A stretch of DNA of 64,000 nt from Trichoplax adhaerens (taxonomy: Eukaryota > Animalia > Placozoa). The position numbers were made by a program, and so were the translations under genes. Numbering within the stretch: position 1 is the stretch's first letter; each line of letters starts with the position of its first letter. The notes under the pieces are model-generated. The model was given only the letters and a program-made list of their open reading frames with translations. It made no database searches and had not been told where the DNA came from. Below, piece after piece: positions 1-64,000 of the stretch. The stretch is from NCBI RefSeq assembly GCF_000150275.1, contig NW_002060943.1, positions 5,600,008 through 5,664,007 of the forward strand, given 5' to 3'.

Positions 1-858
1 TCAAATGGAATGATCCGTCCCAAAGAATTTGTCATAAAATTAAGAAATGACCAGGCTTTGTTTGCTAATTCTGCTAATGGTAATACTGATGCTTTGACAA
101 ATATGAATGATAGTGAATCACAAATATTCTCTTCTGACCATGATATTGGTAGTCCTAATGGTTTATCATCAGTACAAGGAACTGTAGCTTCTAAAGCTTC
201 TGACCTAAGCCTCGATCGAGGAAACAATAAAATGAGTTTAAGTAAGAAATATTTTTCTTCAGTTCTTGAATTAATGAATAGAAAGGCAAAACTTCCACGT
301 AAACGTAAGCATGATGAATTGGATTTATCTACGGAAGGCCATTCTTTAGGTAATCATTGCTTTGTAAATGAAGAAGGTTATGAAATTAGGAATGAATCAG
401 TTACTGAAGATCATGAAAGTGCTCAATGGGGAGTAGAATTCTTATTCTATTACTTACAAGTGCATTATCGGGGAAAGTATCCTACATGCAGTTATGAAGA
501 GACTGACGAAGGGTTTTTATTGAAAGGTGTTGATGAATACAACAAAATGTTATCGCTAAAAGTAAATTGCCATGGTTTAAAATCGAATAGTAAGGATCGT
601 CCGGTTGACATTGAAATTATAAAAAATAACAGCAAACGATTTATCAAAGTGAAATCTACTACCAAGGATGGAGATATGATTATCAAAATCAGTAGAAATG
701 AGTGGAAGTTTATGCGTGCATCGGGAAGTCGCTATCAGTTATTTTGTGTCTATGGTATACGCCAGCTAGATAAAGTTAGAATAGAGAAAATTGAAGACCC
801 GGCTTCAAAGTTCTTTTCTAATGATTTAGTTCCGTTGGAGATATGCTTTAAGGTGTAA
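1..858 (+). CDS. 3' part of a DUF3883/NO VEIN-C-terminal domain protein (sacsin-like ATPase-nuclease paralogue 1), truncated by the window start
   Basis: The frame is open from base 1 (TCA AAT GGA ATG). The C-terminus WGVEFLFYYL...RPVDIEII...FIKVKSTT...ISRNEWKFM...YQLFCVY aligns by eye with the C-termini of the ORFs at 42739, 56218 and 62359 and with the DUF3883 pattern. Confidence 0.8.
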   Translation, partial: SNGMIRPKEFVIKLRNDQALFANSANGNTDALTNMNDSESQIFSSDHDIGSPNGLSSVQGTVASKASDLSLDRGNNKMSLSKKYFSSVLELMNRKAKLPRKRKHDELDLSTEGHSLGNHCFVNEEGYEIRNESVTEDHESAQWGVEFLFYYLQVHYRGKYPTCSYEETDEGFLLKGVDEYNKMLSLKVNCHGLKSNSKDRPVDIEIIKNNSKRFIKVKSTTKDGDMIIKISRNEWKFMRASGSRYQLFCVYGIRQLDKVRIEKIEDPASKFFSNDLVPLEICFKV

Positions 859-34267: not shown

Positions 34268-34276
34268 AGCTTATGA

Positions 34277-34302: not shown

Positions 34303-34320
34303 AAATCAAATGCATGTTCA

Positions 34321-42738: not shown

Positions 42739-45700
42739 TTAGAATTTAACTACTAATCTAAGTGGCCGATGAGAAGTAGTAATTTTAGATGGTAAATTTT
42801 TAATCCTTTTTATTGGTCCTTCCCTTTTGTTGCCAGCATTATAGACAAGGAATAATTCATAATTATTACCCTCATCGCACATTGTCTCCCATTCTTTTTC
42901 TGTAATATTAAAGGACGCGTTATCATGATAAGTGGTCGATTTAACTTCGACGTACGACTCTTCGACGTACGACTCTGGATCGTCATTCTTAGTAATTTTT
43001 ATATCATATGGTTTTTTACTTTCATTTTCATAGTTTTCCCAGACAATTTTATACGTTACTTTTTTATCATTCTTATCGTACCCAGATAGAGTATACGAAT
43101 TACCATCAGTGTCAACATGGAATTCTTTAAGGTCTCTCTTATAGTAGTCCTGAAGATATAAATAAGCAAATTTTTCGCCCCATTTACCAATTTCCTGATT
43201 ACTTGCTTTAGATATTTCAGAATTCTCCTGTTTTTCATTTGCTCTTGGAATGCTACATGGTGATTGCTTATTTGGGTCTGTATGGATAGATGACGGCTGC
43301 GATTGGTTAAATGGTTGCTTCGATAATCTCGAAGTAACCCCTTCTCGAGTAATAATTGGAAAATTTGTTGCATGATTTCGACCAGAATTAGGTTTACCTA
43401 GGTTATCAACTTCGTTAGAATTAACGAATTTCAAATCTTCTAACTTTATCTTTAGGTCCTTATCATTTCTAGGACTCCCTAAGCTATCAGACATTTGTTC
43501 TTCAAGCCATTTTGAAAGATCTTCGGGGTCCCAAGTGCAAGATAGCCGACGCAAAACGTCTACGTGAGTTTTTTCTTTTTCTTGGTCTAGATTTGACTTT
43601 AAATAATTAATTAAAACATCTATAATGTCTTTTAGAAGAATATCTTTAACGAATGATAAATCCTGATCGTAAAGAATAACTTTAGCTGAAAAACGATTCT
43701 GGTCTTCCTTATCAGGAGATCGTTTTATATACAAGCTATCAACTAGATTAAAATTTATATTCTTTAGACAATTACGCCATTTATCGTAAAGTTGTTTAAT
43801 GTAATCTTTTCTTTCATTCACTGAAAGTGTTGTGTACAGTAATAGATTAAATATCAATTGTCTTGTTTTGTCACACGAAAGCGATGAATCCTCTTTTATA
43901 ATAGACCCGTTTATCGATTTTTCATCAATAATCTGGATTGAAAAGTATTTACATATAATTTTCATATTCGCTATTGTTAAGTTATCAGGTCGTTTTAACA
44001 TGTATTGATTAGGTTGAACAAAAGTTTTAGGACAGGATATGAAACAAAGTGATTTAGCCAATTTTAGACTTCCATCTGTCGACGGTAGTTCAATATTTGC
44101 CTTTCGTAGCTTTTCTAAATCTTGGTCATCCCACTGTGATATAATAATCTTTTGATATATGTTACCGAATTTGGTAATATATTCGTTCTCCTTAGTAGTG
44201 ATAGCTTCAAATAATTTAATAGCATCTTCAACGCTTAATGTCTTACGGGCTCCTAGTAGGTGCATAAGCTTGCTCGATAGAGTAATAGTGCAGTCATCGA
44301 ATATGGTTTGCATTTGCGGTAATATCCTACCTAGGTCTTCACCTAAATCATCGATAAAAGTTGATTCATTTGTATACAATTGATTCATGCGATAGCAGTT
44401 ATCATTAGTTGCTTTAATACATTCAGCTTTGTTAAGCATAAATGTTAAATAGTGTTCGGGGTCATCTTGCTGATTACTATTTAGTCGATTCTTTTTAATG
44501 TCATCCTTAAATTTTTCAATATTATCAATTATATCTTTCTCCCTACTTTGTAAATATTGAAAGAATATTCTCGCATAATCAGCTTCAGGTAAGCAATTTA
44601 TATAAGGTAGATAAGCAATATGAAACTGAAAGTCATCTGAAAAGGTTAAATGTTGATAATTCTCCAAATAGCATTTATAACATTTAAGATCATCTGCAGG
44701 TATTTTTTTCTTTAGAAGGGTGTTATATGTAGCAGAATCACAAAAAAAATTTAAAGTTTCTAGCACGCCTAATTGTTTTAATGTGTGTTTTAATGTTGAC
44801 TTTAAGTTCTCGCTTTGTTCGTCTTCTAGTACTGATTTTAGTTTGTCATAATAATCTTGTGAAACGTAATTGACGTCATGGCATATAGTCGGTGGGTTTT
44901 CAAAGACAATTTCTAATGGTAAATAGCAATCTTTAGCTAATTGCATGGATCCATTAGTTACTGCCAATTTCAAATTTAATAATCCTCCATTCTTGCCGGA
45001 TTCAATCTCTAAATTATCGCTAAATTGACATAAAAATACCACAATTTCAATTGAGAAATCTTTATCAATGTCTTCTCCATCTTTTAATAATTTAGCTATC
45101 TTTTCAATAATAATTTGGTCTTGTATTTCTTTGAGTCCAAGGCTTTCTAAACATGGTTTGGCATCGGGAATATTCAATATATCTTTACTAATAAGAGTAA
45201 GTTGGAGTTTAGCTGCAAATTTTTGATATTTAGGATTAGGTAAGAATAAATTGGAACTTGAAAATAAAATATCATTGTTGGCCAATAAAATTTTTTTATC
45301 CTTATAATCCTCCCTTTCAGATTCAGATTCAGATTTATTCCACAAACCTATCAACATTTTAATTAACTTTAGGTATTTTTCTCTACCATCTTCTTTTTTC
45401 AAACATTCATCGGCATATATTTCTACTTTTTCGGATAATTCCTTCAGCGAAAACTTACGCATCTCTTTCTTTAGAGCTTTTAAATCGTGATGTACAATTT
45501 TAGATGCATTATCGTTGTCCAGAAACGAAAATGTCTTGTAGAATTCGATTTCATCTATAATAGCCTCATTGAATTTCAGCAATTTTTTTGGATCTGAATC
45601 AGACGGAATGAATTCAGTATCTTCCAGAGCTTTTTGAACCCCTTCTTTGTAAGCTTCTTGCAACTCTTTTGGGACATTGTTTCCCAGTTTTTGTTCAAAT

Positions 45701-46926
45701 AAATCCAATATTAAGTTGCGATTTTTTTTATCATTTCGAGCAATAGTTTGTAGTGAAAGTATGTGTGAACTTCCGATATTCTGGAATAAGAATAAATTCC
45801 ATTCATTTACTAGTAACTGCCTCCTTTCCGGATAGATTAAGAAATCAGAAATGATGTAGAATGGATAGTTAAGATCAATGTTTGTTGGAAAGTAACTAAA
45901 TAATTTTTTTTTTTTAGCTTCATTGGTTATTTTGCCTTCCTTATTCAATCTGTTAGCAAACATGATACGTGTGCTTTTAGCTTTCTTTAGCGTCTGTGGG
46001 CATTCATAACGATTGTAATGTTGGAGTTTCTCTTGTAAATCTTCAGGAATATCTATGGTGCGCTCTGTTACCAGCCAAGATGTTTTATTTGTTTTTTTCT
46101 TTGGAGTCGTTGAGTCTTTCTTGATTTCGTATCGCTTCAAGTATGTATTATTTTTTGGGGATTCTAGTCCGGCAGTCTTTCCTGATTCTGTATTGCTGCA
46201 CTCATTTTCATCTCGTGAAGTTCTTTCTAAACAGATTTTTGTATTATTTGTATTATTCGTCTTATTCGTACAAGTTTCTAAAGAAATCATTTTTATCTTT
46301 CGTAGATACAGCATAAATAGCAGTGATTTTTTAAGATCTTGGAACAAGTCCTCAATAATCTCATCCTTTTTGAGTTTGAATAGGAATTGGGTGTTATAGC
46401 CTGGAGGAACATTTGCAATACGGTGTGGTAGATCTTTATTCTCTGTCCAGATTGGAATAACTTGCCATGGATAATCAGAAGCTAGATCTGATTGAGAAGG
46501 TTTATTCCATTTTTGATAAGAACTATCGAAGCGAAAAGTATATCCGCCGGATTTGATAAAAGCGGCGTCTGAAAAAACGAATACCGATTTAAATCCCATA
46601 CCTATATAATCGTTATTATTTGAGTTGTTCTTCTTGCTATTAGATTTTGATTGTGTATTGCCACAGATAGCCTCGACATTTCCAAGATCAAAAGCTTTGC
46701 CTGTATGTGAAACGCTTAAATATCTTTCTTTGATTTCAATCTTGAATGATAAGCTGATATCGCTGTGATCGTTGGCGTTTCGTAGCAACTCAAAAATAAT
46801 TTGTTCTCGATTTTTAGCAAAAAATTGAATATCTTCATTGATTCTACCAGCTAGGTTAGCTGCATTGCTGTCATTTTTACATCGCTGGTCGAATATATCT
46901 TCAATTTCCCCTTTCTTGTCCACCAT
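42739..46926 (-). CDS. Sacsin/NO VEIN-like GHKL ATPase + DUF3883 nuclease protein (paralogue 2), intronless, 1395 aa
   Basis: N-terminal IFELLRNAND, SHTGKAF, GMGFKSVF, SGGYTFRFD, PWQVIPIW, YFPT...YPFYIISDFL...R (sacsin-repeat/HATPase_c_3 pattern). C-terminal IGKWGEKFAY...PYDIKI...YVEVKST...ITEKEW (DUF3883). Confidence 0.88.
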   Translation of the reverse strand: MVDKKGEIEDIFDQRCKNDSNAANLAGRINEDIQFFAKNREQIIFELLRNANDHSDISLSFKIEIKERYLSVSHTGKAFDLGNVEAICGNTQSKSNSKKNNSNNNDYIGMGFKSVFVFSDAAFIKSGGYTFRFDSSYQKWNKPSQSDLASDYPWQVIPIWTENKDLPHRIANVPPGYNTQFLFKLKKDEIIEDLFQDLKKSLLFMLYLRKIKMISLETCTNKTNNTNNTKICLERTSRDENECSNTESGKTAGLESPKNNTYLKRYEIKKDSTTPKKKTNKTSWLVTERTIDIPEDLQEKLQHYNRYECPQTLKKAKSTRIMFANRLNKEGKITNEAKKKKLFSYFPTNIDLNYPFYIISDFLIYPERRQLLVNEWNLFLFQNIGSSHILSLQTIARNDKKNRNLILDLFEQKLGNNVPKELQEAYKEGVQKALEDTEFIPSDSDPKKLLKFNEAIIDEIEFYKTFSFLDNDNASKIVHHDLKALKKEMRKFSLKELSEKVEIYADECLKKEDGREKYLKLIKMLIGLWNKSESESEREDYKDKKILLANNDILFSSSNLFLPNPKYQKFAAKLQLTLISKDILNIPDAKPCLESLGLKEIQDQIIIEKIAKLLKDGEDIDKDFSIEIVVFLCQFSDNLEIESGKNGGLLNLKLAVTNGSMQLAKDCYLPLEIVFENPPTICHDVNYVSQDYYDKLKSVLEDEQSENLKSTLKHTLKQLGVLETLNFFCDSATYNTLLKKKIPADDLKCYKCYLENYQHLTFSDDFQFHIAYLPYINCLPEADYARIFFQYLQSREKDIIDNIEKFKDDIKKNRLNSNQQDDPEHYLTFMLNKAECIKATNDNCYRMNQLYTNESTFIDDLGEDLGRILPQMQTIFDDCTITLSSKLMHLLGARKTLSVEDAIKLFEAITTKENEYITKFGNIYQKIIISQWDDQDLEKLRKANIELPSTDGSLKLAKSLCFISCPKTFVQPNQYMLKRPDNLTIANMKIICKYFSIQIIDEKSINGSIIKEDSSLSCDKTRQLIFNLLLYTTLSVNERKDYIKQLYDKWRNCLKNINFNLVDSLYIKRSPDKEDQNRFSAKVILYDQDLSFVKDILLKDIIDVLINYLKSNLDQEKEKTHVDVLRRLSCTWDPEDLSKWLEEQMSDSLGSPRNDKDLKIKLEDLKFVNSNEVDNLGKPNSGRNHATNFPIITREGVTSRLSKQPFNQSQPSSIHTDPNKQSPCSIPRANEKQENSEISKASNQEIGKWGEKFAYLYLQDYYKRDLKEFHVDTDGNSYTLSGYDKNDKKVTYKIVWENYENESKKPYDIKITKNDDPESYVEESYVEVKSTTYHDNASFNITEKEWETMCDEGNNYELFLVYNAGNKREGPIKRIKNLPSKITTSHRPLRLVVKF

Positions 46927-47399
46927 TTTCTATTAACATCGACGTCTATCTCTCTCCCTTGGTACCTATATTAATATTGATAATAAAGGTTCATATATAT
47001 TTCAATGTTAATAATAGTAATAGATATATTTGTATTTACATATATGTAAATGTATAAGTACAATGATTACACTAGACAATAGGGGAAGCGGGTTTATACT
47101 TTCTATAATAATTTATTGTCAAAATTTTGAAATTTGCCTTAACTCTTAGATTAGACAAAGTGTTATAGCTGGAGTCTTATGATGAAAGAATTAAAATGTA
47201 GCAATACTATCGCTTCAAAATGCTTTTATCTATAATATGAAAATTGATGGTAGTACGAGCAGCTTTCTTTATTTAATATTGTTTTAGTACGGCTAAGTGT
47301 AATTTTAGAATTTCTATCAAAGAATTCTTCATAGTAGTTTGAGATAATAATTGCTGCATCTTTCTACACTGTATAATCCAACGATAAAATCGATCAAAG

Positions 47400-49350
47400 T
47401 ATCTTATTGAAATATAAACGGCATTTGTTGTAAGGGAACAGAAGGGCATTCACATGCCTATAAGACTTTTATGTCTGCTATACAATATCAACGTGAAAGT
47501 TCGGAATATTATAGTCTAAAATAGGTTATCGCAGCTCATGGCTATATTAAGGGACTTGATAAATATTTTACTCGCTGCAAGTATGAGCAATAAAGAGTTA
47601 ATAATAGTCGACTTAGGCTTTGCTTTTAATACTGAGTTAGAGTAAAGCAAGAGAAATACAAGACCCATTAAAAAAGTAATGGGACTGCTTCGATATCTTG
47701 AAAATACTTTATTTATTCATAACATTTAACGTTAAAACCTTCAAAGTAATCACCGACAGCTTCATCGCACTTACTCGTACGTAATCAAGGTTGATTTTTA
47801 GAATTCTCTTTCAAAAATTACACTATAGAAGTAATTTATAGCTGTAAGAAAAAAATGAAGTATTGATGAAGTAGAAAAATCCAGGAATCTTACCCACTGT
47901 TAGTAGTTTTGACTAATTTAATTAATTAATTACGCTAGAAATTATCCTTGAAATCAATATTCTGCAAACTCGATCACTTTATCCAGCCTGCAATTATGCA
48001 ATTTATTATTATTATTCCATCTTAATTTTGTTAAGTACTATATTGAGTTATATATATTATTTTGCAAGTTTAACTTGGCCGACATTTAGTACGTTTCGGC
48101 TAAACTGTAAATATACGCTCGTTAAGTTAATATAGTCCTGAATACTTTAGTTTTAAAAATAGAAAATAATTTATAATAGGTTACTAGCTAAATTTGGAAA
48201 GGAATTATTTGTAGAATCTGTCTGAACTTGTGTGATAAACTTTCATAGCTTCGTTGCAATTACTTTGGAATAGCACATAATAGTTTTATACCAGTAATAA
48301 ATCTTAAGTTTTTGTAACACCAACTACTCTGTAAAATACTGTATATGAAGAGCTACGTAATTTGGTAGTGCTGTTATAGAAATTGTAGAGAAGTGCTAGA
48401 TGTTTGAGAGGTTATATTGAAGTAAGATATTATGGTTATTTGCTGTACTAGTTGCTAGTATTTCCAGCTTCTGTTATAACTTCTTTTCCATTGGTAGTTG
48501 CCATTGTACTACGTTTCATTTACGATTATTTATACGTTTGGTATTAGAATAGATCAAGATTAAGATAAAGATGGTATTTCTCTCAAAAGATGCGCTGGTT
48601 CAGGTAGGGTATTATTGCAGTTGTAGTAAGTCCCAAAATTTTTCCTTTATCACTAATAAAAGTCTCTGAACGGGTAGGAAATTAAATGACATGAAGTCTG
48701 CTATTAGTCAAAAATATGTCAATGTCACTATTTTTAATTCACTATTATAGCTTGAGTATTGCTAACTACGGCGATACTTGAACGATAGTAAAGGCTAGAA
48801 AACGTTGTAATTCTCGTTGACAATCTATCTTAAGGCGGTGAATGTTTTTAACTGGAAACATGCCTTAATAATAGAATATTGCTCTAATGTCATAGAATTA
48901 AAATTGTAATTGGTACTTTGAAATACAGCTCAGCTCTTTCATTCCGCTACATGATTGCAATTTACTATGGACTATCTAACTACTGTGAAAGATAAACTAT
49001 TTACTAGCTATAATTACCTGCTTCAGAATTGCTTGCTTGGCTTTACTTCTGGTATTTATCGAAGTTAATTAAATGCTAGAAAATTCAGATTTAATGGATT
49101 AACTTTATCGTTATTATATCCCAACGATAACGAATATTTGTCCAATTTGATAGCTTATTTTCTTCTAAAAATTTTCGAAGCGACTATGGAAAGTTATCGT
49201 TGTTTTCTATATCAGAATATAGACGAATTTCTAAATCTAATAAAATACTAAGCGTCACTTATTGCGCTTATCTATCCAGGTCTGAGTGATATCAATCTCG
49301 GTAACTCAATCAACATAGCTGTGGTAAGAGAATGGGTAGATAGTACATAA
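47400..49350 (-). pseudogene. Degraded LRR-GPCR-like remnant (boundaries approximate)
   Basis: Minus-strand fragments LPRLISLR, LAFN*LR*IP and SSLQNIDFKDN, then the hinge/TM1-like SCDNLF*TIIFRTFTLIL at about 47480-47540. Many stops and frameshifts. Confidence 0.35.
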
Positions 49351-50951
49351 GTAATCAAGTTTTAATCCTAAATTGTTATCTAATAAATAGTAATGTCTTA
49401 AGGCGTTGTTTTTGATTCTACAGAAGAATTGAATGGAGCGTTTTGTTTGATATGCAATCTATTGTATTTATCATTAAACACTATTATTAGTAGTATCATT
49501 AATAATTGGTAAAAGATAATTAAATACTATGAATATTCATCAGTACGGTGTTGATTAATGTTATTTTGCACATATAAACAATGCTATTTTTTAGATCTGC
49601 TTGGCATGGAAATTTTTCCGAACCACGCCTGGACCCGGAAGTAAATTGATAATAAAGTGGATAAGCACTGTTCCAGTATCTTCAGTGCCATCTACGGTAG
49701 CTAAGCCTTATCGTTTCAAGAATCACATTGCACTTATAAACTTGTAAGATAGTCGAAATACAGCAAGTTCCGAAATCATTTTGTTATCATTATGATTACT
49801 TGACGCAGATTTGATAGCTCGACTTTATTCTTGTTATGAAACTAAATAATGTAAGTGACGTCAATAACCCATCGAATAGATAGCTAGAGCAATTTTTTGT
49901 TAAGAAGTTAAATGATGTATGTGACGTCAAATAACCTATCAAATTGATAGCTTGGCTTTATTCTTAACCTTCTTCTAGACTGCTCTTGCACAACTTTTCA
50001 CGATTTAATTTGTTTTTACCTAAATTAGGAACTTCTAAAAGATTTTCAAAGTATTATAAGATAACTAAGCGTAATTAAATTACAAATAAGTGATGTTAAA
50101 ACAATGATTAATACCTCTTAGAATATTTAATTAAATACAAAATGTTGCCGTTGGCACTTTTAAAGGTTTCCTTACAGCAACTACCGATGCTAATTTTTTC
50201 GTGATGACGTAGAATTTAATGTCTAATTAATGGTTTTAAATAATTATGAATAGAATAGTATTGATATTTATAAAAATAACGCATTAACGCACTTAGTTTT
50301 GCCCACCTAAAGTGCAACGGAATAAATAGAACACCGAAAGTGCCAGTCTAAAATCTCTTAAAACTTGAAAGTATAGCACATTCTATTACTGTCTATAGTA
50401 CTAAAATCGCAAGGAATCAGCTTATAGTTACTGTATTTTTAATATCGGAACTAAATGGTGATGATCGAGTGACTTAAACTGAGATATTCGATAAATTTTG
50501 AAGCGTGCATTTCAACTTTATGTTGTAACCGTAAACCCGTAACACACAATCTTCTAAACCCTAGTAATGAATTTTTTCCCTTAATGTCATTGTATTGCCA
50601 CTAATTAAAAAGTTCTAAATTGTTACTATTCATAATAAATCTTATAAAATGCTTCATTGTTATTATAATGGTAATAGAAACTAAATAAACTTTTATATCT
50701 AGCGTATCGGCGTTCCGTAATTTTCTAACTGATGATTGCATGATTCTAAGAGAAAATCCAGTCGCAGATTAACATTTTATCTCGCCATTCACTTCATAAT
50801 GACCACATTGTACACAATCTTTGCAATGGAACGGTTTAGAGTGCTATATTGATCTCGAAAGTTTGTAACTCAAATAAGGATGTGGTCGCGATGACTTTTC
50901 ATCTCTCTATTCATAACCACAAGACAGTACGCGTATGCGAGTATCAGTAAC

Positions 50952-51570
50952 TGTTACGAGCTAGGAATAGCCCTAGCTTGCAGCAAGGATTGAGAGAGTG
51001 ATTTGTACCCTTTACTACTATTATTTGGAATACCAGATAATTGGTATTCCAAGGCAGATTGGATTTAACATAGAAAGACCTTCAAGACTTACTAGAAAAT
51101 CACAATCTAATTTATTGTCGGCGAACTCGCCGTTTATATAGGCTTCGGACCTAAACCGGTTTAGCTACGCAAGTCACCTTGTCTATTAGAAATTAACCAA
51201 ATTAATACTCTAAAGAGATTCTATCTGTACAGATTAGATACAGCTTAATCCTATTAAATTTACTGTAACAATATTAAAATAATCAATGCTTATTACTAGT
51301 TTAACAGATGCATATAAAGCTTTCCTACCAAGACATTTCATCTAAACTTAGGAATCGTACTTTGAATCTTAACACTTGGAGGTGATAGACATAATCCAGT
51401 TTAGCTGGTTGGCAATTACTACTTTAGTCTATATAATCCTAAATTAAGTATATCAACTGTTAACCACTAAAATTACAATTAAGGAGACCGTAAAACATTT
51501 CTGAGATATAAACATATATAGAACGTAACATAGAAATAAAGCATACGTCACGAAGATTACTTTCGTGACA
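50952..51570 (-). mobile_element. Probable solo LTR (619 bp)
   Basis: TGTTACGA...TCGTGACA termini (1 mismatch) flanked by GTAAC/GTAAT (5-bp TSD with 1 mismatch). On the - strand TATATAAA (about 51134-51141) is followed by AATAAA (about 51111-51116). Confidence 0.55.
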
Positions 51571-52159
51571 GTAATTAAAAACGATGCCATTTAAGGAAGC
51601 GTGTGAGAAAGTACCGTAAATTGTTAAAAGACAACAATGAATTATTTTAGCTTTACCACAGGCACAAGGTGATTGATGAATGGCAGCATTCGATTATATG
51701 ATGTCAGTTTTCAATTTTGATACATTTACGGAATCAATTCAAAAATAATCCTTTATCTAATATACCAGATTTACGAGTTCTTTCGAATCTTACAAAGTAA
51801 TACCATTGAGGACCAGAACTCTACTGTACGTTAAAATTTCGAACTGTTGCGACTTGAAATATTGCCTAATTATTACTTCAGCTAAAGGTATGGCTGTATT
51901 TATTAATAAATACTAACGTAGAAAGTTACGAACATAAGCTAACGGCGACTTAATAATGATTAGCTTAAAAGAGACTGTAAAACTAGTCTAAAAACACAGG
52001 ATCCTTACTAAATTTTTTAATATAAGCGAAATCTACATCGAACATGGGCAACAATTTTACTATTATGCTATCCTCTTTGTCAAGGTATACATTGGATTAA
52101 ATACATCAACAAGTCGAAAATGTTTTCACTTATTGCACACTACGTATTTACGGTTCAAA

Positions 52160-54470: not shown

Positions 54471-56217
54471 CGAGCAAAGTAAAGACCTGCTATATGTAAA
54501 CACTCAAGGTTCTAGAGACTGGCTCTTGCATTTTAATAATATGACCTTGAATATGATTTAGTTCGATTCTGTGATAATTAATGCACATCCATAGAGGTTT
54601 TTTTATTATCTCCATGGTAGGTCTTAATTTTACTGACAATATGGAGTATTACAGTATCCAAGTTTGTCGAATAATACTATCAAATTTTCGTTATTATCTG
54701 TTCTCTTATTCACGGTAGTATGATCAATGCTTCATATGATAACATAAATAAAGTGTATGTGCTGTTACCTGTAAATTTATTCAACGATAGTAAATACGGT
54801 ATTCTGTCTACGTAACACAAAACTCATATACTCTTTTAACGGCTTAGATATGTATAGTTGCATTGTAAGCTTACTTCACAAAGTAGCGTTAACAGTATTA
54901 CTTATCAATAACGATTAATATCAGTCATATTAGTGTCTAAAAGTTTATACTTGCTACGATTATGATACTAAAGGCTCAACGTTTTATTTAATTAAGATTT
55001 TTAAAGACAATATTAATTTAAGAGCGATCAAAAGCTATGAATTCTGCAGCCTTTAAATTTTTCTACTAAATATCTTGATCAGGAGAATGTATTGATTTTT
55101 CTATAATTACTACCAATTCGCAATCAAAATTTTTGTGGTTGATATCGTGTATTGATGTATAGGTTCTCCTTTTCCAATAATAGAGTGATATAGCAATAAT
55201 ACTAAATATTTCCAATACTTCGATACACAATTTTCATAATCTTGCTTACTCTTACTAATAATACCGATTTCTTTTATTTCCTATCTAAATTTTCATATTG
55301 ACATAGATAGTTGTAATAATTTATTATGGCAACTATATAATCAGCTAGCTCTATGTTATCTTTAGAAGTAACAATAAAAGTACTAGCTAGGGTACTAATA
55401 TAACAGGTTCACCGATAATAAATTATTTTACAGTACCGCATATGCGTATAGTTGGCGATAGCAATAAAAGATATTTTTTGGTGCGATGTACTATAATGGA
55501 GTTTCGTTGAATCGGCAATTACTTATTATTTAGAAATTGATGCCATATGGATTTTACTTATCTTTATATAATGAAGCAAATTTTATTTATCATAGGTTTA
55601 TGACGATGTATTATAAATACCAACAGGAACTGAGATAACTCCTTAATTTTAAACATCACATAGCTTATAGCAAATAATGGCATGATGTAACAAATTATTT
55701 GTTTAAAGGCAAATATCTTATTAGCAACCATTTTTACGTAATATTGACAGACTCTGTTAATATTTTAGCATGTCTATAATATAGATATTACCGTAAAATA
55801 AGAGGTAAAACTTATCTTTTACAAAAAAAATGGCGGAAATAAGCCAACTAATGATGTTCCTTCGTTATCAAATTAGTAATCCAATGATAACTTTAACCTG
55901 ATCTTTCCTACCTTTAGAATGAAGCGATATTTAAATTAAGATCACAGCTACTTATATTATAACTGTTAACGGGTTTTGACCGTAACCTAACCATTTCTAA
56001 ATAGAATGATAATTTAACGCCTATCTAGGATTAGTAGCTCGATCAGTTTTGCTTTAGCAGTATTTTCATTTATGGCTCGGAAATGATGCCAAACAGAATT
56101 GGTAAAATAGGTATTTGCTTTCATCTAAAACAAAATATTCAATTCAAAATTAACCTCATTCCAATGTAACACATTGTTATCACATGATTAATGACTACAG
56201 CTAACATTTCTTATAAG

Positions 56218-59200
56218 CTATATTTTAAAACGAATCTCCTTCGCAGTTGCAGGATTATTCATTAATTGAGATGCAGGATCCTTAATTTGTTTGATCGTAA
56301 CCTCCCCTTCTATTCCGGCATTATAAATGCAACATAGTCGATAATTTTTGCCTAGTTGGCACATATACTGCCATTCTTTTTGACTTATCTTGATAAAAAG
56401 ATTTTTATTTCTATAAGTAGTTTTAACTTCAATAAACTTTGAAATATTGTTTTTAATTACTTTTATGTCGGCTGATGAATTGCTTTCTTGACTGTAATTA
56501 AGCCAAGTTATGGTTACTGATAAGTTTTTTCCTCGACTATCAATGCCTCTCATAAATGCCGTTCCTAAATATTCGTATTCTATTAAAATAATACGAAACT
56601 GTTTCCTATAATAGCGTGTATAATATTGAAAAGCAAATTCTTCTCCCCATCGACCAGTCCATCGATTATGGCCCTTATTCTCATTACTGTTATTTTCTCT
56701 CTCCTTAGAAATACTTCTTATGTGGCCTACTTGATTACGTTGAATAGTAAAATTAGTTGATGTATCTGAATGATTTGTTAAGTTAGTACAATGAGTATAC
56801 TGTACTTGAAGGCCGGTATTTTTAAACAGTGCTTGAGATTTTTCGTCGTATTTCATCAAGCTAACATTAGCTCGGGCAGCATTTACAGGTTTGCAGTATT
56901 GAAGATAATTATCATCTTCAGATGAGCTTGTAGGCTCAGAAATATTTGAATTCGTCTCGCCTGTTTTGCCTACACAAGATGATTTGTTGATAAGTGTTAG
57001 CTGATGAGATACTTTGCGATTGCGAACGAATTCTTCTCTTGATAATTCACTTTTACTATGTTGCTCATAAATTTTATGTGTCCATATACTTGTTCGAAGC
57101 CTTTTACTCTCTGATTCTGTGCCGATGTTATCGTCTTCATCTAAGGATTCGAGAATATATTTTGGTTTTGTGCTGTAGTTCAAATGTGTAACATTTTCCG
57201 TAGTATCTCCGCCATCAGAATGGCTTTGTATATCGCCATCTGGTATGCAGTTCTCATCTATCATGAGTAAGGCATTAACGTTATAATTCTTTTTCTCTAG
57301 CCATCTGAGACGATCTTTTTCGGTATTGATTAATGATAATATTTCTAGATACCTTAAATTATCTTCAGATAATTCTAAATATGTTGCAATACTTTTTACA
57401 ATATCATCTAAATTGCTAGTTTCATCAGAATCATTATCATGTAGAAGTTTAGTACCAGTAAGTATAACTTCGATTTTGAAAGTAATTTTTGAATTGGCTT
57501 TAACCTCAAGTGCAAGTCTTTTAACTGCTAAAATATCGAGTTTATTCAGTTTTGCGTGCCATTTCTTGTATAATCGATTTCGGTAACTTGTAGATTTCGC
57601 TTCTGTTATAACAACCATTTTTAACAAATTTGTAATTAATGTTTTCATTTTTGAATTATCTTTAGGATGATCATAGATTATTTTATAGTCATTCGCCGTT
57701 AATATTTGAACGCCAAAATAGCGGCAAATCATTAACACATCTTGTACTGTTAGATTTGAAAATGACTTTAAAAGATTTCGATGCCTCACACCGCATAACT
57801 CTTTGTCAGGAATAAAATATAACGAACTGGTATATTGTAAAGATCCATCCGAAGCTAATATTTTGCTATTTGATTGCTTTAATTTTTCGTAATAAATATC
57901 ATCCCAAGGTGATGCTATCACTTGTTTATAAAGGCTTTGAAATTGATCATGATATTTTTGTGGTGATCTTGAATTAATGGCATTTATGAGTTTGATGACA
58001 ATTTGCACGGTTAGCTGGTTGCGAGCCCCTAATAACTTCATTAGATCCTCGGCTAGATTGATAGTTATACTACCAAATTTAGTTTGCATCCGTGGCAAAC
58101 AGTATTGCAGTTCTTTCTCTATGTGCTCAGCTAACGATGATGTATATTAATCACCCATCGAATAGAATTTTCCATCAGTAGCTAGGATGCAAGGAGTCTT
58201 GTTAAGCATGAATTTTAGATATGGCATAGCAGAATAAGAATAGCTATTTTTGTTAGATTTACTATAAATTTTAAATACTTTCATTCCTTCGATGACCGCA
58301 TCTTGATTTTGAGCTAACTGTTGGAAAAAGAATTTTGCATAATTTTTTACCTTTAAGCAACTCATATAGGGTAAGTAGGCTATATGATAATGATAGGACT
58401 TATTTAATTGGATCATATTGACATTCGTAATGTAATGACTATATTCTTCAAATTTATCAATATCACTACTATCAGAATTTTGATTGAATTCTCCACAAAA
58501 AAAATGAATTTCCTCTTTAACTTGCAACTGCAGTAGTATCGATTTGACTTTTTCTGCAGTTATTGATGTATGGCGGTAAGATTTGTAATCTATAAATCCT
58601 ATGTCTTCAGTTACAATTTTTTCAAGATCCAAGCGTGGTTTAAGTTCTGATGGCAAATAACAGTCTTTTGCTGCTCTGATGTTACCAGATTTAGTTAGTA
58701 ATGGCAATTTATTTAAATTGGAATATTTCAGTTCAAACTCCATTTTGAGGCAACATAATAATTGAACAATTTTAATAGATACGTCGAGATAAGATGGAGA
58801 ATGTTGCTTAACTTTGATACCTTTCAAAAAATTTTCAAGGATTTCAATTATTTTTGCGTCCGTTATGTGGCTGACACCTATACTTTTCAACTATTTGACT
58901 GAATCGGGAATCTCAAGCATGGCAGGATGTATAAAGTCAATTCCTAAAATTGATGGGTATTCTTTCAATTTCCTACTGACTGGTAGATAGACAGCAGAAC
59001 TGTTAGATAATTTATTTTGATCCGTCAATAGAAACGATATTTTTTGCATGTGTGTTCGTAATTCTCTATCTGTATATCCGAATGATGAACAGGTATTTAT
59101 CAGAAATTCTATAAGTTTTCCATAGCATGATTTCTCTATACAGATTTCGCTATATTGTTCTAAATTTTCTGTTAGTTTAAGTAAAGTAAAGTGGCTAAGT

Positions 59201-60567
59201 AATTTACTCTGATTTTCTAATCTGTAGCTTGCAATCAATTTACGTTTCGTTAAATCAATACTTGGAAATGCCTCAAAGAATCCTAAATCGTCCGAAATAG
59301 CTTCGCCCCATTTCAGTAATTGCCACTGATTAATATGAGAAGGTATGAAGGCGATTTTTGCTAGTTCAATATCGATAGTACTACTGTATACGTCGGTAAA
59401 TTGTTGCGATATAGTCCCTTTTAATCGGCGTGTTAAAAGTAATAAAACGTGATCACAATAATATTCATTTAGAGCAAATTCATGTAATAAAGCGATATGA
59501 AACTTAGCTATGCATCGAAACATATATTCATTCCATATATTAGTTAATAATTGTGTTCGATCTGCACTAAGTAAGAAGTCGCCATTGACTAGAAACGGTA
59601 AACCGGAGTACATTTGTGTAGGTAGATAGCAAAATAGTACTGCTTTATGATGGGCTTTTAACGTTCCTTCTTCGCCGAATAGGAATGCAAATTTGAGATT
59701 AACTGATGTTGCTTGTTTAAGTTTAGTCGGACATTCTTGATCGGGTAGTCGCTGTAACTTTTGATGGATTTCGTTAGGAATTTGTTGTTCGTCGGATCGA
59801 ATTAACCATTTACTCTTCAATGTATCGTTTACATATAATTCGTATTGATTAGACGTATCGAATAACTTTCTTAATTGAATAGAATCGATACGATTATGTT
59901 GACGAATTGTAATTTCTTGTATGTTACGTAAGAACAAGATAGTATTAGGTGTTTGCATCAGTATTTTAAGTGCGTTATATACCTTTTCAACATTATTCAC
60001 AGATCGAGTTTCGTCGACTAGTTGAAATAGGAAAGTAACATGTGACTTATTCAGTTCAAATACTTTCGGTAATTGATTTTGCTGTGTCCAAATAGGCGTA
60101 ATTTGCCAAGGATAACGTCTAAATCTATCGCTATCGTTATTACGCCATTTTGCATAATCGCGATCAAATCGGAAACAATAATTTCTAGATATAATATAGA
60201 CACGATACGATATTACAAATACAGACTTAAATCCGATTCCTTTAAAGCCAGTCTTGCTTAAATCGGTTTTCTTCCGTGTAAACTGTTGTTGTGCGTTATC
60301 ACAAATAGCTTCGACATCTTGATAATCGAAATGTCTACCGGTATGAGAAAAGGCTAAGTATCGTTGATTGATTTGGAATGTAACATGTATAGGTTGATTA
60401 TCGATAGCAGCATCATCAGCGTTTTGTAGTAATTCTAGAGCGAATTTCTCGGGACTGTTAAAAACAGTTTGGATATCTTTGTCTAGAGTGTTAGCTAAGG
60501 TAGTAGAATTTTTATCATTTTTACCTCGCTCGTCAAATAATCTTTCGATGTGTTCTTTTTTATCCAT
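56218..60567 (-). pseudogene. Sacsin/NO VEIN-like GHKL ATPase + DUF3883 nuclease (paralogue 3), 1449 codons interrupted by two in-frame stops
   Basis: ORFs 58891-60567, 58147-58890 and 56218-58098 are all in one frame and collinear with the 1395-aa paralogue. Stops are TAG at 58891-58893 and TAA at 58147-58149. Canonical ELLQNADDA, TGFKGIGFKSVF and TGRWGEEF...ADIKV...FIEVKTT motifs. Confidence 0.88.
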
Positions 60568-62358
60568 AATTTGTATTCCTCAATTTAATCTCGGTTATAT
60601 ATTGCGGTAATGTAGATTGTTGTAGCAAATAGATCGAAATGGTTAGAGTTCCGTAGGGTGTCGTTCCTACTAGCGTCTAGGGCTTTGCTATCTTCCGCTA
60701 CTAAATTATGCTCCTTGTCCAAGTAAATTAAAAAAAATTAGATGAAACTTGGATCTCTAATGAAACCTGCTGATGTTGGCACACGGTAACAATAGAAAAT
60801 TACTGACGCCACTAAAACTAAATTATACATTATTTTGTTTAGTGTATTGCAGTGTTGAAGAAACTTTTTTATTTATGAACAAGGATTACATCTGAATAAT
60901 TAAATCCTAATATTAAAATCGTCACATGACACACTGTAATGAAAGTCATAGCCGATCCAAGTAGCTAATATTTGGAATGTTGTTTATATTCTTTTTATGA
61001 TGTACGGTCATTTATTCTCCTGACAATCTGCTTCGCCAAAATGAGACATAAATAATTTGATAAGACTATAAAATAGTGCTAAGGTAATTCTTTAACCTTT
61101 TAAATAATAGGCTAAAGATTAATATAATCTATTGTTGCAATTAGTTAGGCATAGCTGCCATGGCATGTAATGTTCAGTAGTCTACCATTAAGTTCATTAT
61201 TAGCTGATTCTGTCCATCTTTTATTCTCACCTTTCCATGACTGGTGATCTTTCTACTGTTACTTTGATTCTAGGATTTCATCGAAATGCGTATATGTAAT
61301 TATAGAATTTGGCAAACTGCTGTGTATACTGACCAGGAACTAAAGTCGGTGTTATAGCCTATTACAATCAGGCGAAGTATATCTCCATCATACTTGATAC
61401 GGTAAGCTGTTAAGATTTTCAAATGAGTTGCAGCTTAAAACATTAACCAGATACTTTGAGAATTAATGTACTATATAATTAGATGTATAATTATAATCGT
61501 CGAAATTATATCATATAGAAATTTCACTCTCACTTTATATTGTCCCTATCATAATATCAAAAGAAATAGAATTAACCAGGCCTAAAACTTCTAGCTGCAT
61601 GCAATATTAAGGCATTATATAGTATTATGCTGTAATGTACGTTAGAATTGTGTCAGAACTGGTTTTGTATAGTAGTAAGTTTCGAAAGGAAACTGAAGTC
61701 CTGGAGGTTCTAAAAAGGAAGTCCATTCAATTCATATCATAATTTTATTTTAATCAAATAGCGCACAAATTGAGAGATATCGTTTAGCTCTGTAATATAA
61801 TAATAAGCTGGCAATTTCAGTCTTTAATATGATATGAAATGAAGCATAAAGAAAATTGTGCAAAGTTCAAAAATAAAAAATGTATAATAAGAAGGCAAGT
61901 TGAATGCAAAAGAAGTCACTAGCTTAAAAATATATACTGAATGCTAAGCTTAATCGTAAAATCTTCTATTCTTTTAGATATGTTAATGATTTAGTAACTA
62001 TTCTACTACTATCAAATTAAATAGTAGATAGATATCAGATACATCATAACTATAGCGAATTTGCATATGGAAGGAGCTAGTGCAATGACTGAAATAGAGT
62101 TGCTTTAACAATTAATTAAGTATAGCTGGAATGATGATTTAATGTCTGGATTGTAATTCAATGACAATCAAATTTATTACCGATACTTTAAGAAGTATAA
62201 TACTTGCGGCTAATGTAAATTGATTAAATATTAAATGATCACTATGATATTACGAACTCGCGTATTTTTGCCTCAATTACAATTTATTATATTATTCGAT
62301 TCCAGAGATTGCCAATAATATTAATTTTCCTTTACGATTACAAACGATTTCCAGTAAA

Positions 62359-64000
62359 CTATAAATTAAAGTAAATTTCCTTTGGAATTATAGATCCTTC
62401 CATTACTTTAGATATGGGATCTTTAATTTGTTTAATCAGGACATCTCCCTCTTTACCTGCGTTATAGATGCAAAATAATCGGTAATTTTTGCCATACTGA
62501 TGCATACTTAGCCATTCCTTTTGACTAATTTTACAAAAAAGATTTTTTTTCTTATAAGTAGTTTTAACCTCAATATACTTTGAACGATCATTTTTAATGA
62601 TGTTAATATCAGCAGGAAAATTGCTTTCTTGGTCTTTATTAAACCAGATTATTTTAACTGATAGATCTTTACCTCGATGATCAACTCCTTTCATAACTAT
62701 TGCTTCTCTATTGTTAGTTTTTTCTAGAGAACGAAATTTCTTTCGGTAGTAATCTTGAAAATACTTATACGCAAACTCTTCTCCCCATCGACCAGTCCAT
62801 CGATTATAATTATTATTACTTTTAATTTTGTTTTTTTTAATTTCATTTTCGTAGGCAGTGTTTTCTAATCGAGATGCTTCAAAAAAATTTACAGTAGGAC
62901 GATTAGATGACCAAGCAGATTTACTTGTCTCAGAGAAATTTGTTAAATTGATAGCTTGAATACACTGTTCTTTATCACTGGAATTTGCAAATAATGATGG
63001 AAAGTTTTCATCTTGCGTGTATTCTATCGCGTAGAAAGTAGCTTTGATCGCATCAGCGGGTTGACAATATTCTAAACACTTTTCGTCTTCAGATGAGCTT
63101 GACGATTTGGAGCTGTTCCTTTTACTAGCCTCACTCTGAATTGTCGTAGATTTTTTAACTTTTTTAAGCCTTTTACTTTCGGACTTGACATCGGTAATTT
63201 CATCGTCTAACGATGCTGATGTCAATACTGAGTGTAGATTAGATGGTGTAGATGAAAGATTTTGGGTCGCTTTTTCGCTAAGAATTGTATCGGCTTGATT
63301 TTCAGTATCATCACCTAGTAAACAATTCTCATCCATCATGTCCAAGGCAGCGATATTGTAATTTTGGTTTGTTAACCATCTAATGCGACTTTTATTGGAA
63401 TTAGTAATCACTAAAGTATTCAAAACATAATGATTAGCTTCCGATAGTTCTAAATATGCTGCAATGGCTTGTGCGATGTCATGTAAGTTATTGTTGTCAT
63501 CAAGATGATTTTCGTAAAAAAGTTGATTACTGGAAAGTGCCAGTTTATTTCTAGAAAGTATCGCTTCTACTTTGAAACTGATTTTTGAATTAGATTTAAC
63601 TAACAGAGCTAAACTTTCAACTGCTAATATATCTAGCTTATTTATCTTTTTAAGCCACTCTCGAAGCAACTGACACCGTCCACGATGACTAGGATTTATT
63701 TCAGTTATAGCAACCATTTTTAGTAAATTCTTAATCTCAGTCTTTATGATTGAATTATCTTCAGATTTATCATAAACTATTTCGTAATCATTTGCCTTTA
63801 ATTCTTTAACGCCAAAGTAACGGCAAATTATGAGCATATCTTCTTTTGTTAGAGCGGGGAAAGATTTTAGTAGATTTGGATGTCTTACGCTGCATAATTG
63901 TTTGTCAGGAATAAAATATAATGCATCAATAGATTGTAAGGATCCATCCGAAGCTAAAATTTTAGTATTTGACTGCCTTAATTCTTCGCACTGACTATCA
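62359..64000 (-). CDS. 3' half of ATPase-DUF3883 paralogue 4, truncated by the window end
   Basis: The frame stays open to 63999 (DSQCEELRQSNTKILASDGSLQ...). It is closely similar to 56218-58098, with intact TGRWGEEF...PADINI...YIEVKTT...ISQKEW. Confidence 0.85.
   Translation of the reverse strand, partial: DSQCEELRQSNTKILASDGSLQSIDALYFIPDKQLCSVRHPNLLKSFPALTKEDMLIICRYFGVKELKANDYEIVYDKSEDNSIIKTEIKNLLKMVAITEINPSHRGRCQLLREWLKKINKLDILAVESLALLVKSNSKISFKVEAILSRNKLALSSNQLFYENHLDDNNNLHDIAQAIAAYLELSEANHYVLNTLVITNSNKSRIRWLTNQNYNIAALDMMDENCLLGDDTENQADTILSEKATQNLSSTPSNLHSVLTSASLDDEITDVKSESKRLKKVKKSTTIQSEASKRNSSKSSSSSEDEKCLEYCQPADAIKATFYAIEYTQDENFPSLFANSSDKEQCIQAINLTNFSETSKSAWSSNRPTVNFFEASRLENTAYENEIKKNKIKSNNNYNRWTGRWGEEFAYKYFQDYYRKKFRSLEKTNNREAIVMKGVDHRGKDLSVKIIWFNKDQESNFPADINIIKNDRSKYIEVKTTYKKKNLFCKISQKEWLSMHQYGKNYRLFCIYNAGKEGDVLIKQIKDPISKVMEGSIIPKEIYFNL

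What the first reader, a model, noticed from the sequence alone, without database searches (positions are those of the whole stretch)
42739..64000. Expanded family of intronless Hsp90/sacsin-ATPase + DUF3883 nuclease genes in an animal genome: a candidate Tiamat-like innate defence locus
Seen: four paralogues in 64 kb (1-858, 42739-46926, 56218-60567, 62359-end). The two complete copies are about 1400-1450 codons and all four are intron-free as far as visible, while neighbouring host genes have about 11-24 exons. Copies 3 and 4 are close; copies 1 and 2 are strongly diverged. Known: a GHKL ATPase plus C-terminal DUF3883 PD-(D/E)xK nuclease is the layout of plant/animal NO VEIN-like proteins and, as I recall, of the single-gene bacterial anti-phage system Tiamat. 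Inference: a horizontally acquired ATPase-gated nuclease was domesticated (its base composition now resembles the host) and amplified in tandem with birth-and-death turnover, as immune genes do. Unambiguous bacterial DNA lies 5 kb away.
Basis: partly seen in the sequence, partly recalled or inferred. Interest (0 to 1): 0.88.

Follow-up and report, generated by a model that had tools for sequence, protein, structure and literature searches.

The report
Bacterial-derived Tiamat nuclease gene cluster in Trichoplax
A placozoan (Trichoplax) chromosome carries a cluster of four intron-free, transcribed genes descended from the bacterial anti-phage ATPase-nuclease Tiamat; this was published in an October 2026 preprint, so only the fine details found here are new.

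Summary
Four intron-free paralogues lie in one gap-free stretch. Copy 1 is 1462 codons, copy 2 is 1395 and copy 4 is 1439. Copy 3 (1450 codons) has two in-frame stops in this assembly.

All match the PADLOC Tiamat profile TmtA end to end (E 6e-138) and Pfam NOV_C. The N-terminal 460 residues fold like Hsp90. The genome is Trichoplax (105.6 Mb), and the family occurs nowhere else in it except one 2.1-kb fragment.

In my trees the four copies form one clade. It sits inside sequences from bacteria-like contigs and uncultured Gammaproteobacteria/Legionellaceae genomes. That fits a single transfer followed by local duplication.

The core claim is not new. bioRxiv 10.64898/2026.09.30.754977 already reports Trichoplax Tiamat genes as bacterial acquisitions.

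New details:
- The annotated "intron" in the sister strain H2 hides a premature stop.
- Synonymous sites between paralogues are saturated, so the acquisition is not recent.
- A 1.3-kb gene-conversion tract links copies 3 and 4.
- Stop codons differ between strains.
- Copy 1 lacks two nuclease catalytic residues, and copy 2 has a diverged ATP lid.
- Copies 3 and 4 are transcribed.

An immune role remains inferred. An earlier scan note (s1-756351) flagged copy 4 on this same genome.

The parts
1..858 (+). 3' end of copy 1 (full gene L004:715-5103, probable ATG at codon 12). It holds the NOV_C nuclease domain, with two of the four canonical catalytic residues replaced (GE to GV; ExK to KVK).
42739..46926 (-). 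Copy 2: intact 1395-codon Tiamat homologue and the most diverged copy. The nuclease motifs D...EVK are kept. The ATPase keeps the catalytic Glu and Asn but has a diverged lid (ELLRNANDH; NNDYIGMGFKS).
56218..60567 (-). Copy 3: 1450 codons in one frame with two in-frame stops in this assembly. It is transcribed and its catalytic motifs are canonical.
58891..58893 (-). TAG stop at codon 559 of copy 3. It reads TGG (Trp, as in copy 4) in three runs of organism B and in the H2 assembly. It is kept as TAG in RNA run X19.
58147..58149 (-). TAA stop at codon 807 of copy 3. It is kept in contigs of X14 and X15. It reads TTA (Leu) in the H2 assembly.
59239..60542 (-). Gene-conversion tract. CDS nucleotides 26-1329 of copy 3 are identical to copy 4 except for one base (nt 361). 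Flanks are about 65% identical downstream and unrelated upstream of the ATG.
61762..62358 (-). Probable 3' UTR of copy 4. Contigs of two probable RNA runs begin at 61762 and 61766. An AATAAA hexamer lies at 61745-61750.
62359..64000 (-). 3' part of copy 4 (full gene L003:259-4578, 1439 codons, intact in this assembly). NOV_C scores 73.8 bits. It is transcribed.

Best explanation
One bacterial Tiamat gene (TmtA, the subfamily of PADLOC profile PDLC03972) entered the placozoan germ line. The donor was probably a small-genome, host-associated gammaproteobacterium. The gene kept its intron-free structure, gained eukaryotic transcription, and duplicated locally into at least four or five paralogues.

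The paralogues have since diverged deeply. Some exchange sequence by gene conversion, and some carry null alleles.

By homology, each intact protein should be a dimeric Hsp90-like (GHKL) ATPase. ATP binding would control a C-terminal PD-(D/E)xK DNase that cuts single-stranded DNA or nicks DNA. The most likely use is restriction of foreign nucleic acid from viruses, ingested bacteria or symbionts.

Shown here: homology, fold, monophyly, bacterial sister group, chromosomal residence, and transcription of copies 3 and 4.

Inferred: direction and donor of the transfer, enzymatic activity, and the defence role. I put the defence role on its own at about 0.35.
For: - Homology: end-to-end TmtA profile match (E 5.8e-138) and NOV_C above cut-off in all copies.
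- Fold: the N-terminal 460 aa give a confident model (pLDDT 88.8) whose best PDB matches are Hsp90, TRAP1 and Hsc82 (E 3e-10).
- Catalytic residues: the catalytic Glu and Asn (ELLQNADDA) and the nuclease E, D, ExK residues are present in copies 3 and 4. Their roles are as mapped in 10.64898/2026.09.30.755639.
- Family size: the family occurs only at this cluster plus one 2.1-kb contig.
- Phylogeny: the four copies are monophyletic (SH-aLRT 99-100). Their sisters P0003-P0005 lie on contigs that are about 96% coding, with 14-83 bp between genes. The next relatives are Gammaproteobacteria and Legionellaceae MAGs.
- Donor lineage: an unusual Sel1-RNase III fusion gene lies next to the relatives in L017 and L115. 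It also occurs in the gammaproteobacterial MAG G003.
- Chromosomal residence: the window is gap-free. The same arrangement sits on an 832-kb contig of the independent H2 assembly, flanked by intron-containing animal genes.
- Transcription: an RNA run on record and two probable RNA runs cover the unique parts of copies 3 and 4 but not the spacer between them. A DNA run covers everything.
- Past constraint: dN/dS is 0.17-0.39 between paralogues.
Against: - No functional data exist for any animal copy.
- Null alleles (stops at codons 154, 559 and 807) differ between strains.
- H1-H2 differences in copy 4 are 16 non-synonymous to 3 synonymous. This fits relaxed constraint as well as diversifying selection.
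- Copy 1 lacks two nuclease catalytic residues, and copy 2 has a diverged ATP lid.
- Transcription of copies 1 and 2 was not tested.
- My trees contain no plant or metazoan NO VEIN sequences. Exclusion of vertical descent therefore rests on the hit list, the missing N-terminal extension and the preprint's tree.
- The origin of the sister contigs is inferred from gene packing, not from markers.
Confidence: 0.72

Rival explanations
1. The genes are bacterial-derived but no longer serve defence. Either they are drifting towards pseudogenes, or they have been taken over for a housekeeping or developmental role, as plant NO VEIN has.
For: - Stop codons differ between strains in copies 3 and 4.
- H1-H2 changes are mostly non-synonymous (16:3 in copy 4, 8:0 in copy 3).
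- Copy 1 has degenerate catalytic residues and copy 2 a diverged ATP lid.
- NO VEIN has developmental roles.
Against: - Three long ORFs (1395-1462 codons) stay open despite saturated synonymous divergence.
- dN/dS between paralogues is well below 1.
- Copy 1 differs less between H1 and H2 (0.09%) than the region as a whole (0.35-0.43%).
- Copies 3 and 4 are transcribed.
Confidence: 0.3
2. The genes descend vertically from the ancestral eukaryotic NO VEIN/Tiamat gene. They lost their introns (for example by retroposition) and their N-terminal extension, then diverged so fast that they only appear bacterial.
For: - NO VEIN-type proteins are widespread in animals.
- The Trichoplax branches are long.
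- No metazoan NO VEIN sequences could be added to my trees.
Against: - Among the best 120 of 5.8 billion proteins, the only named eukaryotes are Trichoplax itself and one spider. The named hits are otherwise bacterial.
- The closest relatives lie on bacteria-like contigs.
- The proteins begin at the ATPase with no extension.
- The preprint's global tree places placozoans with bacteria in clade 4.
- No intron-bearing homologue exists elsewhere in the genome.
Confidence: 0.06
3. The cluster is bacterial contamination or a misassembly, not animal DNA.
For: The genes have no introns, and DNA that looks bacterial lies 5 kb from copy 2.
Against: - The 64 kb is gap-free.
- The second assembly has an identical arrangement on an 832-kb contig between animal genes.
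- Contigs of a DNA run pass from spacer into gene.
- RNA contigs carry 5' and 3' untranslated ends.
- Four diverged paralogues in one bacterial genome would be unusual.
Confidence: 0.01
4. The transfer went the other way, from a eukaryote into Legionellales-like bacteria, which are known to take up host genes.
For: The nearest named relatives are Legionellaceae or gammaproteobacterial MAGs with 1.5-3.1 Mb genomes. Their neighbouring genes carry Sel1/TPR repeats.
Against: The Trichoplax clade is nested several nodes deep in a radiation spanning Pseudomonadota, Bacteroidota, Bacillota and Cyanobacteriota. A bacterial origin needs far fewer transfers.
Confidence: 0.03

Closest known systems
Tiamat (TmtA), single-gene bacterial anti-phage system (Millman et al. 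2022; biochemistry in bioRxiv 10.64898/2026.09.30.754977)
   Same: - Same end-to-end architecture: Hsp90-like GHKL ATPase, long helical middle, C-terminal NOV_C/DUF3883 PD-(D/E)xK nuclease.
- Full-length profile match.
- Catalytic Glu/Asn and E-D-ExK residues kept in copies 3 and 4.
- No N-terminal extension.
   Different: - Encoded in an animal chromosome, transcribed with untranslated ends, and present as a diverged tandem family.
- Best profile is PDLC03972 (1302 positions). From the residue numbers, the tested B. cereus protein is over 1500 aa. I infer, without having checked, that it belongs to a different TmtA subfamily.
- Copy 1 has lost nuclease residues and copy 2 has a diverged ATP lid.
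- Function in the animal is untested.
Trichoplax Tiamat homologues as described in bioRxiv 10.64898/2026.09.30.754977 (clade 4, 'recent' bacterial acquisition)
   Same: These are the same genes and the same conclusion: bacterial-like, flanked by intron-containing genes, few or no introns.
   Different: - The preprint names Clostridium and Paenibacillus as best matches. With metagenome data, my trees put those in the other half and place Gammaproteobacteria/Legionellaceae MAGs nearer.
- It counts one intron per gene. The copy 4 model I checked, in strain H2, uses its 'intron' to skip a stop at the invariant Trp154, and RNA contigs keep that segment.
- It calls the acquisition recent. The paralogues are saturated at synonymous sites.
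NO VEIN (NOV) of plants and NOV-type proteins of animals
   Same: They share the ATPase, the middle region and the NOV_C nuclease.
   Different: NOV proteins carry long N-terminal extensions (LOTUS domains in animals) and introns, and they group by host taxonomy. The Trichoplax proteins have none of these features.
Sacsin (human SACS)
   Same: The ATPase domain is distantly related. Pfam SACS gives 28.7 bits for the copy 3 N-terminus (below the cut-off) and 44.6 bits for copy 1.
   Different: Sacsin has repeated ATPase supradomains, a DnaJ domain and a HEPN domain, and it lacks NOV_C. There is no sequence match to any solved structure.

Membership tests
Tiamat / TmtA | Full-length match to a TmtA profile | tested here: met
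   For PDLC03972, copy 2 scores E 5.8e-138 over protein residues 4-1383 and profile positions 3-1289 of 1302. The copy 3 pieces score 6.5e-115 and 3.4e-33. The ends of copies 4 and 1 score 5.7e-29 and 1.7e-17.
Tiamat / TmtA | N-terminal Hsp90-like GHKL ATPase with a catalytic Glu (E44 in B. cereus Tiamat) and a Mg-binding Asn | tested here: met
   - Copies 1, 3 and 4 carry ELLQNADDA and KTG(Y/F)KGIGFKS.
- Copy 2 keeps the Glu and Asn, but three near-invariant lid residues are changed.
- The model of copy 4 residues 1-460 has pLDDT 88.8, and its top PDB matches are Hsp90, TRAP1 and Hsc82 at E 3e-10.
Tiamat / TmtA | C-terminal NOV_C/DUF3883 PD-(D/E)xK domain with the E, D, ExK residues | tested here: met
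   - The NOV_C domain scores 45.6-73.8 bits against a cut-off of 22.1 in all four copies.
- All four catalytic residues are present in copies 2, 3 and 4.
- In copy 1 two of the four are replaced (GVE and KVK), so this feature is not met for copy 1.
Tiamat / TmtA | Middle region of TPR-like repeats, Fold B and a metalloprotease-like fold | tested here: inconclusive
   The profile alignment runs through the middle without a break. I did not fold this region.
Tiamat / TmtA | Protects against viruses; needs the ATPase Glu | not testable with these tools
   Only bacterial data exist.
NO VEIN (eukaryotic NOV family) | Long N-terminal extension with eukaryote-specific motifs (LOTUS in animals) | tested here: not met
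   Protein residue 4 aligns to profile position 3, and the ORFs begin 1-12 codons before it.
NO VEIN (eukaryotic NOV family) | Groups with plant or metazoan NOV clades in phylogeny | not tested
- Indirect evidence: the named hits among the best 120 are bacterial apart from Trichoplax itself and one spider.
- The preprint places placozoans with bacteria.
Sacsin | Repeated sacsin ATPase supradomains plus DnaJ and HEPN domains | tested here: not met
   There is a single ATPase domain, only NOV_C and weak SACS hits appear in Pfam, and no DnaJ or HEPN is found.

The most novel reading that the evidence does not exclude
The cluster is a working, diversifying innate-defence locus of one of the simplest animals. 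It was acquired from an intracellular Legionellales-like bacterium. Its paralogues have divided the labour: copy 1 is ATPase-competent but nuclease-dead, copy 2 is nuclease-competent with an altered ATP lid, and copy 4 is fully canonical. They may act as mixed dimers. Null alleles and gene conversion are kept in play by an arms race.
Probability: 0.2. Interest if true: 0.7.

Novelty: already known. Interest (0 to 1): 0.4.

Why it matters
Transfers of whole bacterial defence genes into animals are rare, and they are useful for asking how innate immunity was assembled. Trichoplax is a tractable, very simple animal that eats bacteria and hosts bacterial symbionts, so it could serve to test whether a Tiamat-type ATPase-nuclease still defends a eukaryote.

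The headline is already in a preprint. What this report adds is practical:
- The genes truly lack introns.
- The one published gene model checked here (copy 4 in strain H2) hides a stop codon behind a false intron.
- The acquisition is old rather than recent.
- The nearest donors look gammaproteobacterial.
- The copies differ in which catalytic site is intact.
- Copy 4 (in H1) and copy 2 are the sensible ones to express and assay.

Tried and rejected
- Viral vector: a scan of IMG/VR found only distant relatives at 22-27% identity. No support.
- Plasmid vector: tblastn against PLSDB found only N-terminal matches at 24-29% identity, mostly haloarchaeal or Rhizobium. No support.
- Other placozoan orthologues: a search with the copy 1 N-terminal 451 aa, meant to catch fragmentary ORFs, found nothing above 47% identity. 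This proves nothing, because such genomes may be absent or fragmented in the database.
- Identity of the sister contigs: run accessions are not mentioned in any paper, cluster look-up gave no names, and no tRNAs are present. Only gene packing and a shared Sel1-RNase III fusion link them to bacteria.
- ESM Atlas: it gave the family name but no taxonomy.
- Sequence search of solved structures: no hit.
- Careful trees: the mixture-model tree and the bootstrap tree did not finish in the time allowed. The trees reported use LG+G4 with a short search and SH-aLRT support only.
- Bacterial fragment at 33.9-37.9 kb: its 371-aa ORF has only three metagenomic homologues and no PADLOC hit. I found no link to the Tiamat donor.
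- Exact look-up of copy 2 in other assemblies: not on record. Its state in H2 is unknown.
- Handling of copy 3: it was read through its two stops only with X in scripts. The single read-laying run used 6,000 letters.
Full report
WHAT IS THERE

- Copy 2 (42739-46926, minus strand) is an intact 1395-codon frame.
- Copy 3 (56218-60567, minus strand) is 1450 codons in one frame. It is interrupted by TAG at 58891-58893 and TAA at 58147-58149.
- Copies 1 and 4 run off the window. Fetched from the genome, they are 1462 codons (L004:715-5103, probable ATG at codon 12) and 1439 codons (L003:259-4578). Both are uninterrupted.

The window has no N runs. Protein identity is 67% between copies 3 and 4 and 31-38% for every other pair.

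The genome is 105.6 Mb in 1414 pieces. The best named hit belongs to Trichoplax sp. H2, so this is a placozoan.

WHAT THE PROTEINS ARE

Profile matches:
- PADLOC's TmtA (Tiamat) profile PDLC03972 matches copy 2 from residue 4 to 1383, covering profile positions 3-1289 of 1302, at E 5.8e-138. It also matches every piece of the other copies.
- Pfam NOV_C scores 46-74 bits in all four copies, against a cut-off of 22.1. The Pfam SACS hit to the copy 3 N-terminus (28.7 bits) is below its 32.8-bit cut-off; the copy 1 N-terminus scores 44.6 bits.
- NCBIfam's sacsin ATP-binding model just reaches its cut-off.

Fold: copy 4 residues 1-460, modelled with a 40-sequence alignment, give pLDDT 88.8. The best PDB matches are Hsp90, TRAP1 and Hsc82 (E 3e-10, probability 1.0).

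The second preprint maps the essential residues of B. cereus Tiamat: ATPase E44, and nuclease E1458, D1479, E1511 and K1513. In my alignments:
- Copies 1, 3 and 4 carry the canonical ELLQNADDA and KTG(Y/F)KGIGFKS motifs.
- Copy 2 keeps the Glu and Asn, but three near-invariant lid residues are changed (NNDYIGMGFKS).
- Copies 2, 3 and 4 keep all four nuclease residues.
- Copy 1 reads WGVE instead of WGEE, and KVK instead of EVK. Its nuclease is probably inactive.

HOW MANY COPIES, AND WHERE

Whole-genome searches with the protein and with NOV_C find only these four genes. The one exception is a 2.1-kb unplaced contig (C1021) carrying a fifth NOV_C domain, 45% identical to copy 4. No intron-bearing NOV-type gene was detected. 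No relics lie elsewhere in the window.

The independent Trichoplax sp. H2 assembly has the same arrangement on one 832-kb contig. It is 99.57-99.65% identical across flanks and genes. The flanking genes are PHAX, two Glyco_transf_8 genes, a zf-CCHC gene, a STAND-TPR gene and an SRCR/MAM gene, and their spans exceed their coding lengths. Contamination or misassembly is therefore excluded.

ORIGIN

Of the best 120 hits among 5.8 billion proteins, the named ones are bacterial apart from Trichoplax itself and one spider protein.

I built two maximum-likelihood trees: 76 rows on a fast alignment, and 34 rows on an L-INS-i alignment. Both use LG+G4 with SH-aLRT support only.
- The four Trichoplax copies form one clade (support 99 and 100).
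- They are sister (support 100) to three proteins from SRA-derived contigs, P0003-P0005.
- Next out come gammaproteobacterial and Legionellaceae MAGs.
- Paenibacillus, Clostridium and Flavobacterium proteins fall in the other half of the tree.

The sister contigs look prokaryotic. They are about 96% coding, have same-strand genes 14-210 bp apart, and carry MFS, Sel1, TPR and NACHT-like neighbours. The closest N-terminal relative (47% identity) lies on a metagenome scaffold with an SF1 helicase, a Sel1-RNase III fusion and a phosphopantetheinyl transferase. The same odd fusion lies next to the homologue in L017, and it occurs in the 2.5-Mb gammaproteobacterial MAG that carries L028.

I read this as one transfer from a small-genome gammaproteobacterium, followed by local duplication. 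The donor identification is inference.

Base composition is host-like (GC 32-34%, GC3 26-28%), but the bacterial sister contigs are only 36-38% GC. Composition therefore says little.

AGE AND DYNAMICS

Synonymous divergence between copies 1, 2 and the 3/4 pair is saturated (dS above 2). Between copies 3 and 4 outside the converted tract, dN is 0.34 and dS is 1.1-2.0. dN/dS is 0.17-0.39 throughout. The duplications are therefore old and were mostly under purifying selection. This does not fit the preprint's word 'recent'.

Copies 3 and 4 share CDS nucleotides 26-1329 with a single mismatch. Downstream they are about 65% identical, and upstream of the ATG they are unrelated. This is a recent gene conversion of the ATPase domain.

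Differences between this assembly (H1) and H2:
- Copy 4 differs at 19 codons: 16 non-synonymous and 3 synonymous.
- Copy 3 differs at 8 codons, all non-synonymous.
- Copy 1 differs at 4 codons. That is 0.09%, below the regional 0.35-0.43%.

In the H2 assembly both copies 3 and 4 read TAG at codon 154, which is a Trp invariant in 40 homologues. H2 copy 3 reads Trp at codon 559 and Leu at codon 807, where this assembly has stops.

The H2 gene model P0001 lacks exactly codons 151-183. The annotated 'intron' is therefore a device that skips the stop. RNA contigs keep that segment.

In the laid runs, position 58892 reads C (making TGG) in X14, X15 and X3, but T in RNA run X19. The TAA at codon 807 is kept in X14 and X15. 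In DNA run X3 a contig breaks at that base and depth halves there, which hints at heterozygosity.

The stop codons thus differ between strains and assemblies. Whether the codon-154 stop is real or an assembly error is open, because none of the four laid runs shows it.

TRANSCRIPTION

I laid four runs on 58001-64000. X19 is RNA on record. Its contigs lie on the copy 3-specific part (58001-59024) and on the copy 4 3' part (62567-64000). It has no depth in five consecutive bins of the spacer (60801-61800).

X14 and X15 are probable RNA runs from two other studies. They cover both genes and are empty over 60601-61000 (X14 over 60601-61600). DNA run X3 covers all 30 bins.

The contig over the converted tract continues for 118-120 nt into copy 4's own upstream sequence, which I matched. 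Contigs at the other end start at 61762 and 61766, about 600 nt past the stop and near an AATAAA hexamer.

No joint with minus-strand splice sites was seen. Copies 3 and 4 are therefore transcribed, unspliced, with untranslated ends. Contigs cannot give expression levels. Copies 1 and 2 were not tested, because only one read-laying run is allowed.

MECHANISM

By homology, the intact proteins should be ATP-gated DNases. B. cereus Tiamat hydrolyses ATP, cuts ssDNA at defined sites and nicks duplex DNA. Its ATPase Glu is needed for defence. A defence role in Trichoplax is plausible but unshown. I put it at about 0.35, against about 0.3 for decay or a non-defence role.

PRIOR ART AND NOVELTY

bioRxiv 10.64898/2026.09.30.754977 (1 October 2026) already reports Tiamat homologues in placozoans. 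It places them with bacteria in clade 4. It argues from flanking intron-containing genes and large scaffolds that they are genuine. It proposes acquisition from bacterial prey. The main finding is therefore already known.

- The genes truly lack introns, and the one H2 model checked (copy 4, P0001) uses a false intron to skip a stop.
- The copies are monophyletic, and the duplications are old.
- The nearer relatives are gammaproteobacterial.
- A gene-conversion tract links copies 3 and 4.
- Stop codons differ between strains.
- Catalytic-site losses are specific to individual copies.
- There is direct RNA evidence for two copies.

An earlier first-stage note of this scan (s1-756351) flagged copy 4 on this same genome.

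Noticed in passing
window 33890-37915: A stretch with higher GC (37-38.5%) holds two MORN_2-repeat ORFs (36095-36835 and 36816-37793) that overlap in different frames, probably one gene with a frameshift. It also holds a 371-aa ORF (34461-35576) whose only homologues are three metagenome proteins at about 40% identity. None has a PADLOC hit. I found no link to the Tiamat donor.
   Followed up: partly
window 22024-24720 (- strand): An 898-codon intron-free ORF has no Pfam or PADLOC family and no usable Atlas look-alike. The Atlas model is poor, with pLDDT 0.42.
   Followed up: partly
window about 8695 onward (+ strand); L114:22193-24356: In the H2 annotation, a multi-exon gene with DUF4062/AAA_16/nSTAND1/TPR_NPHP3/TPR_12 hits lies about 8 kb downstream of copy 1. 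It is an NLR-like STAND NTPase.
   Followed up: no
G000:C1021:1-2141 (L006): This unplaced 2.1-kb contig holds a fifth NOV_C domain, 45% identical to copy 4. Its frame is open to the contig start. It may be an unassembled fifth paralogue.
   Followed up: partly
window 59239-60542: In DNA run X3 the converted tract has a word depth of 103, against 34-38 on its flanks. That is about 2.7 times, where two copies would give twice. It may hint at a third copy of the tract. The tool warns that depth is not copy number.
   Followed up: no
window 63482-63655: One contig of X15 skips 172 bases with GT..AG ends on the + strand, antisense to copy 4. The shorter side is only 28 letters. It may be an antisense transcript or an artefact.
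   Followed up: no
L017:286-2496, L115:6236-8314, G003:C60:20423-22126: An unusual Sel1-repeat plus RNase III fusion protein (about 690-740 aa) lies next to Tiamat relatives on two bacteria-like contigs. It also occurs in a gammaproteobacterial MAG. It may be a conserved partner gene.
   Followed up: partly
G000, many contigs (e.g. C1397:89583-91085, C1398:1070636-1072054): The genome holds dozens of TPR_12-type matches inside very long open frames of 750-1490 aa. This points to a large family of intron-poor TPR genes.
   Followed up: no
G000:C1409:3646714-3647157: An RNase III-like match lies inside a 1444-aa open frame, far from this cluster.
   Followed up: no
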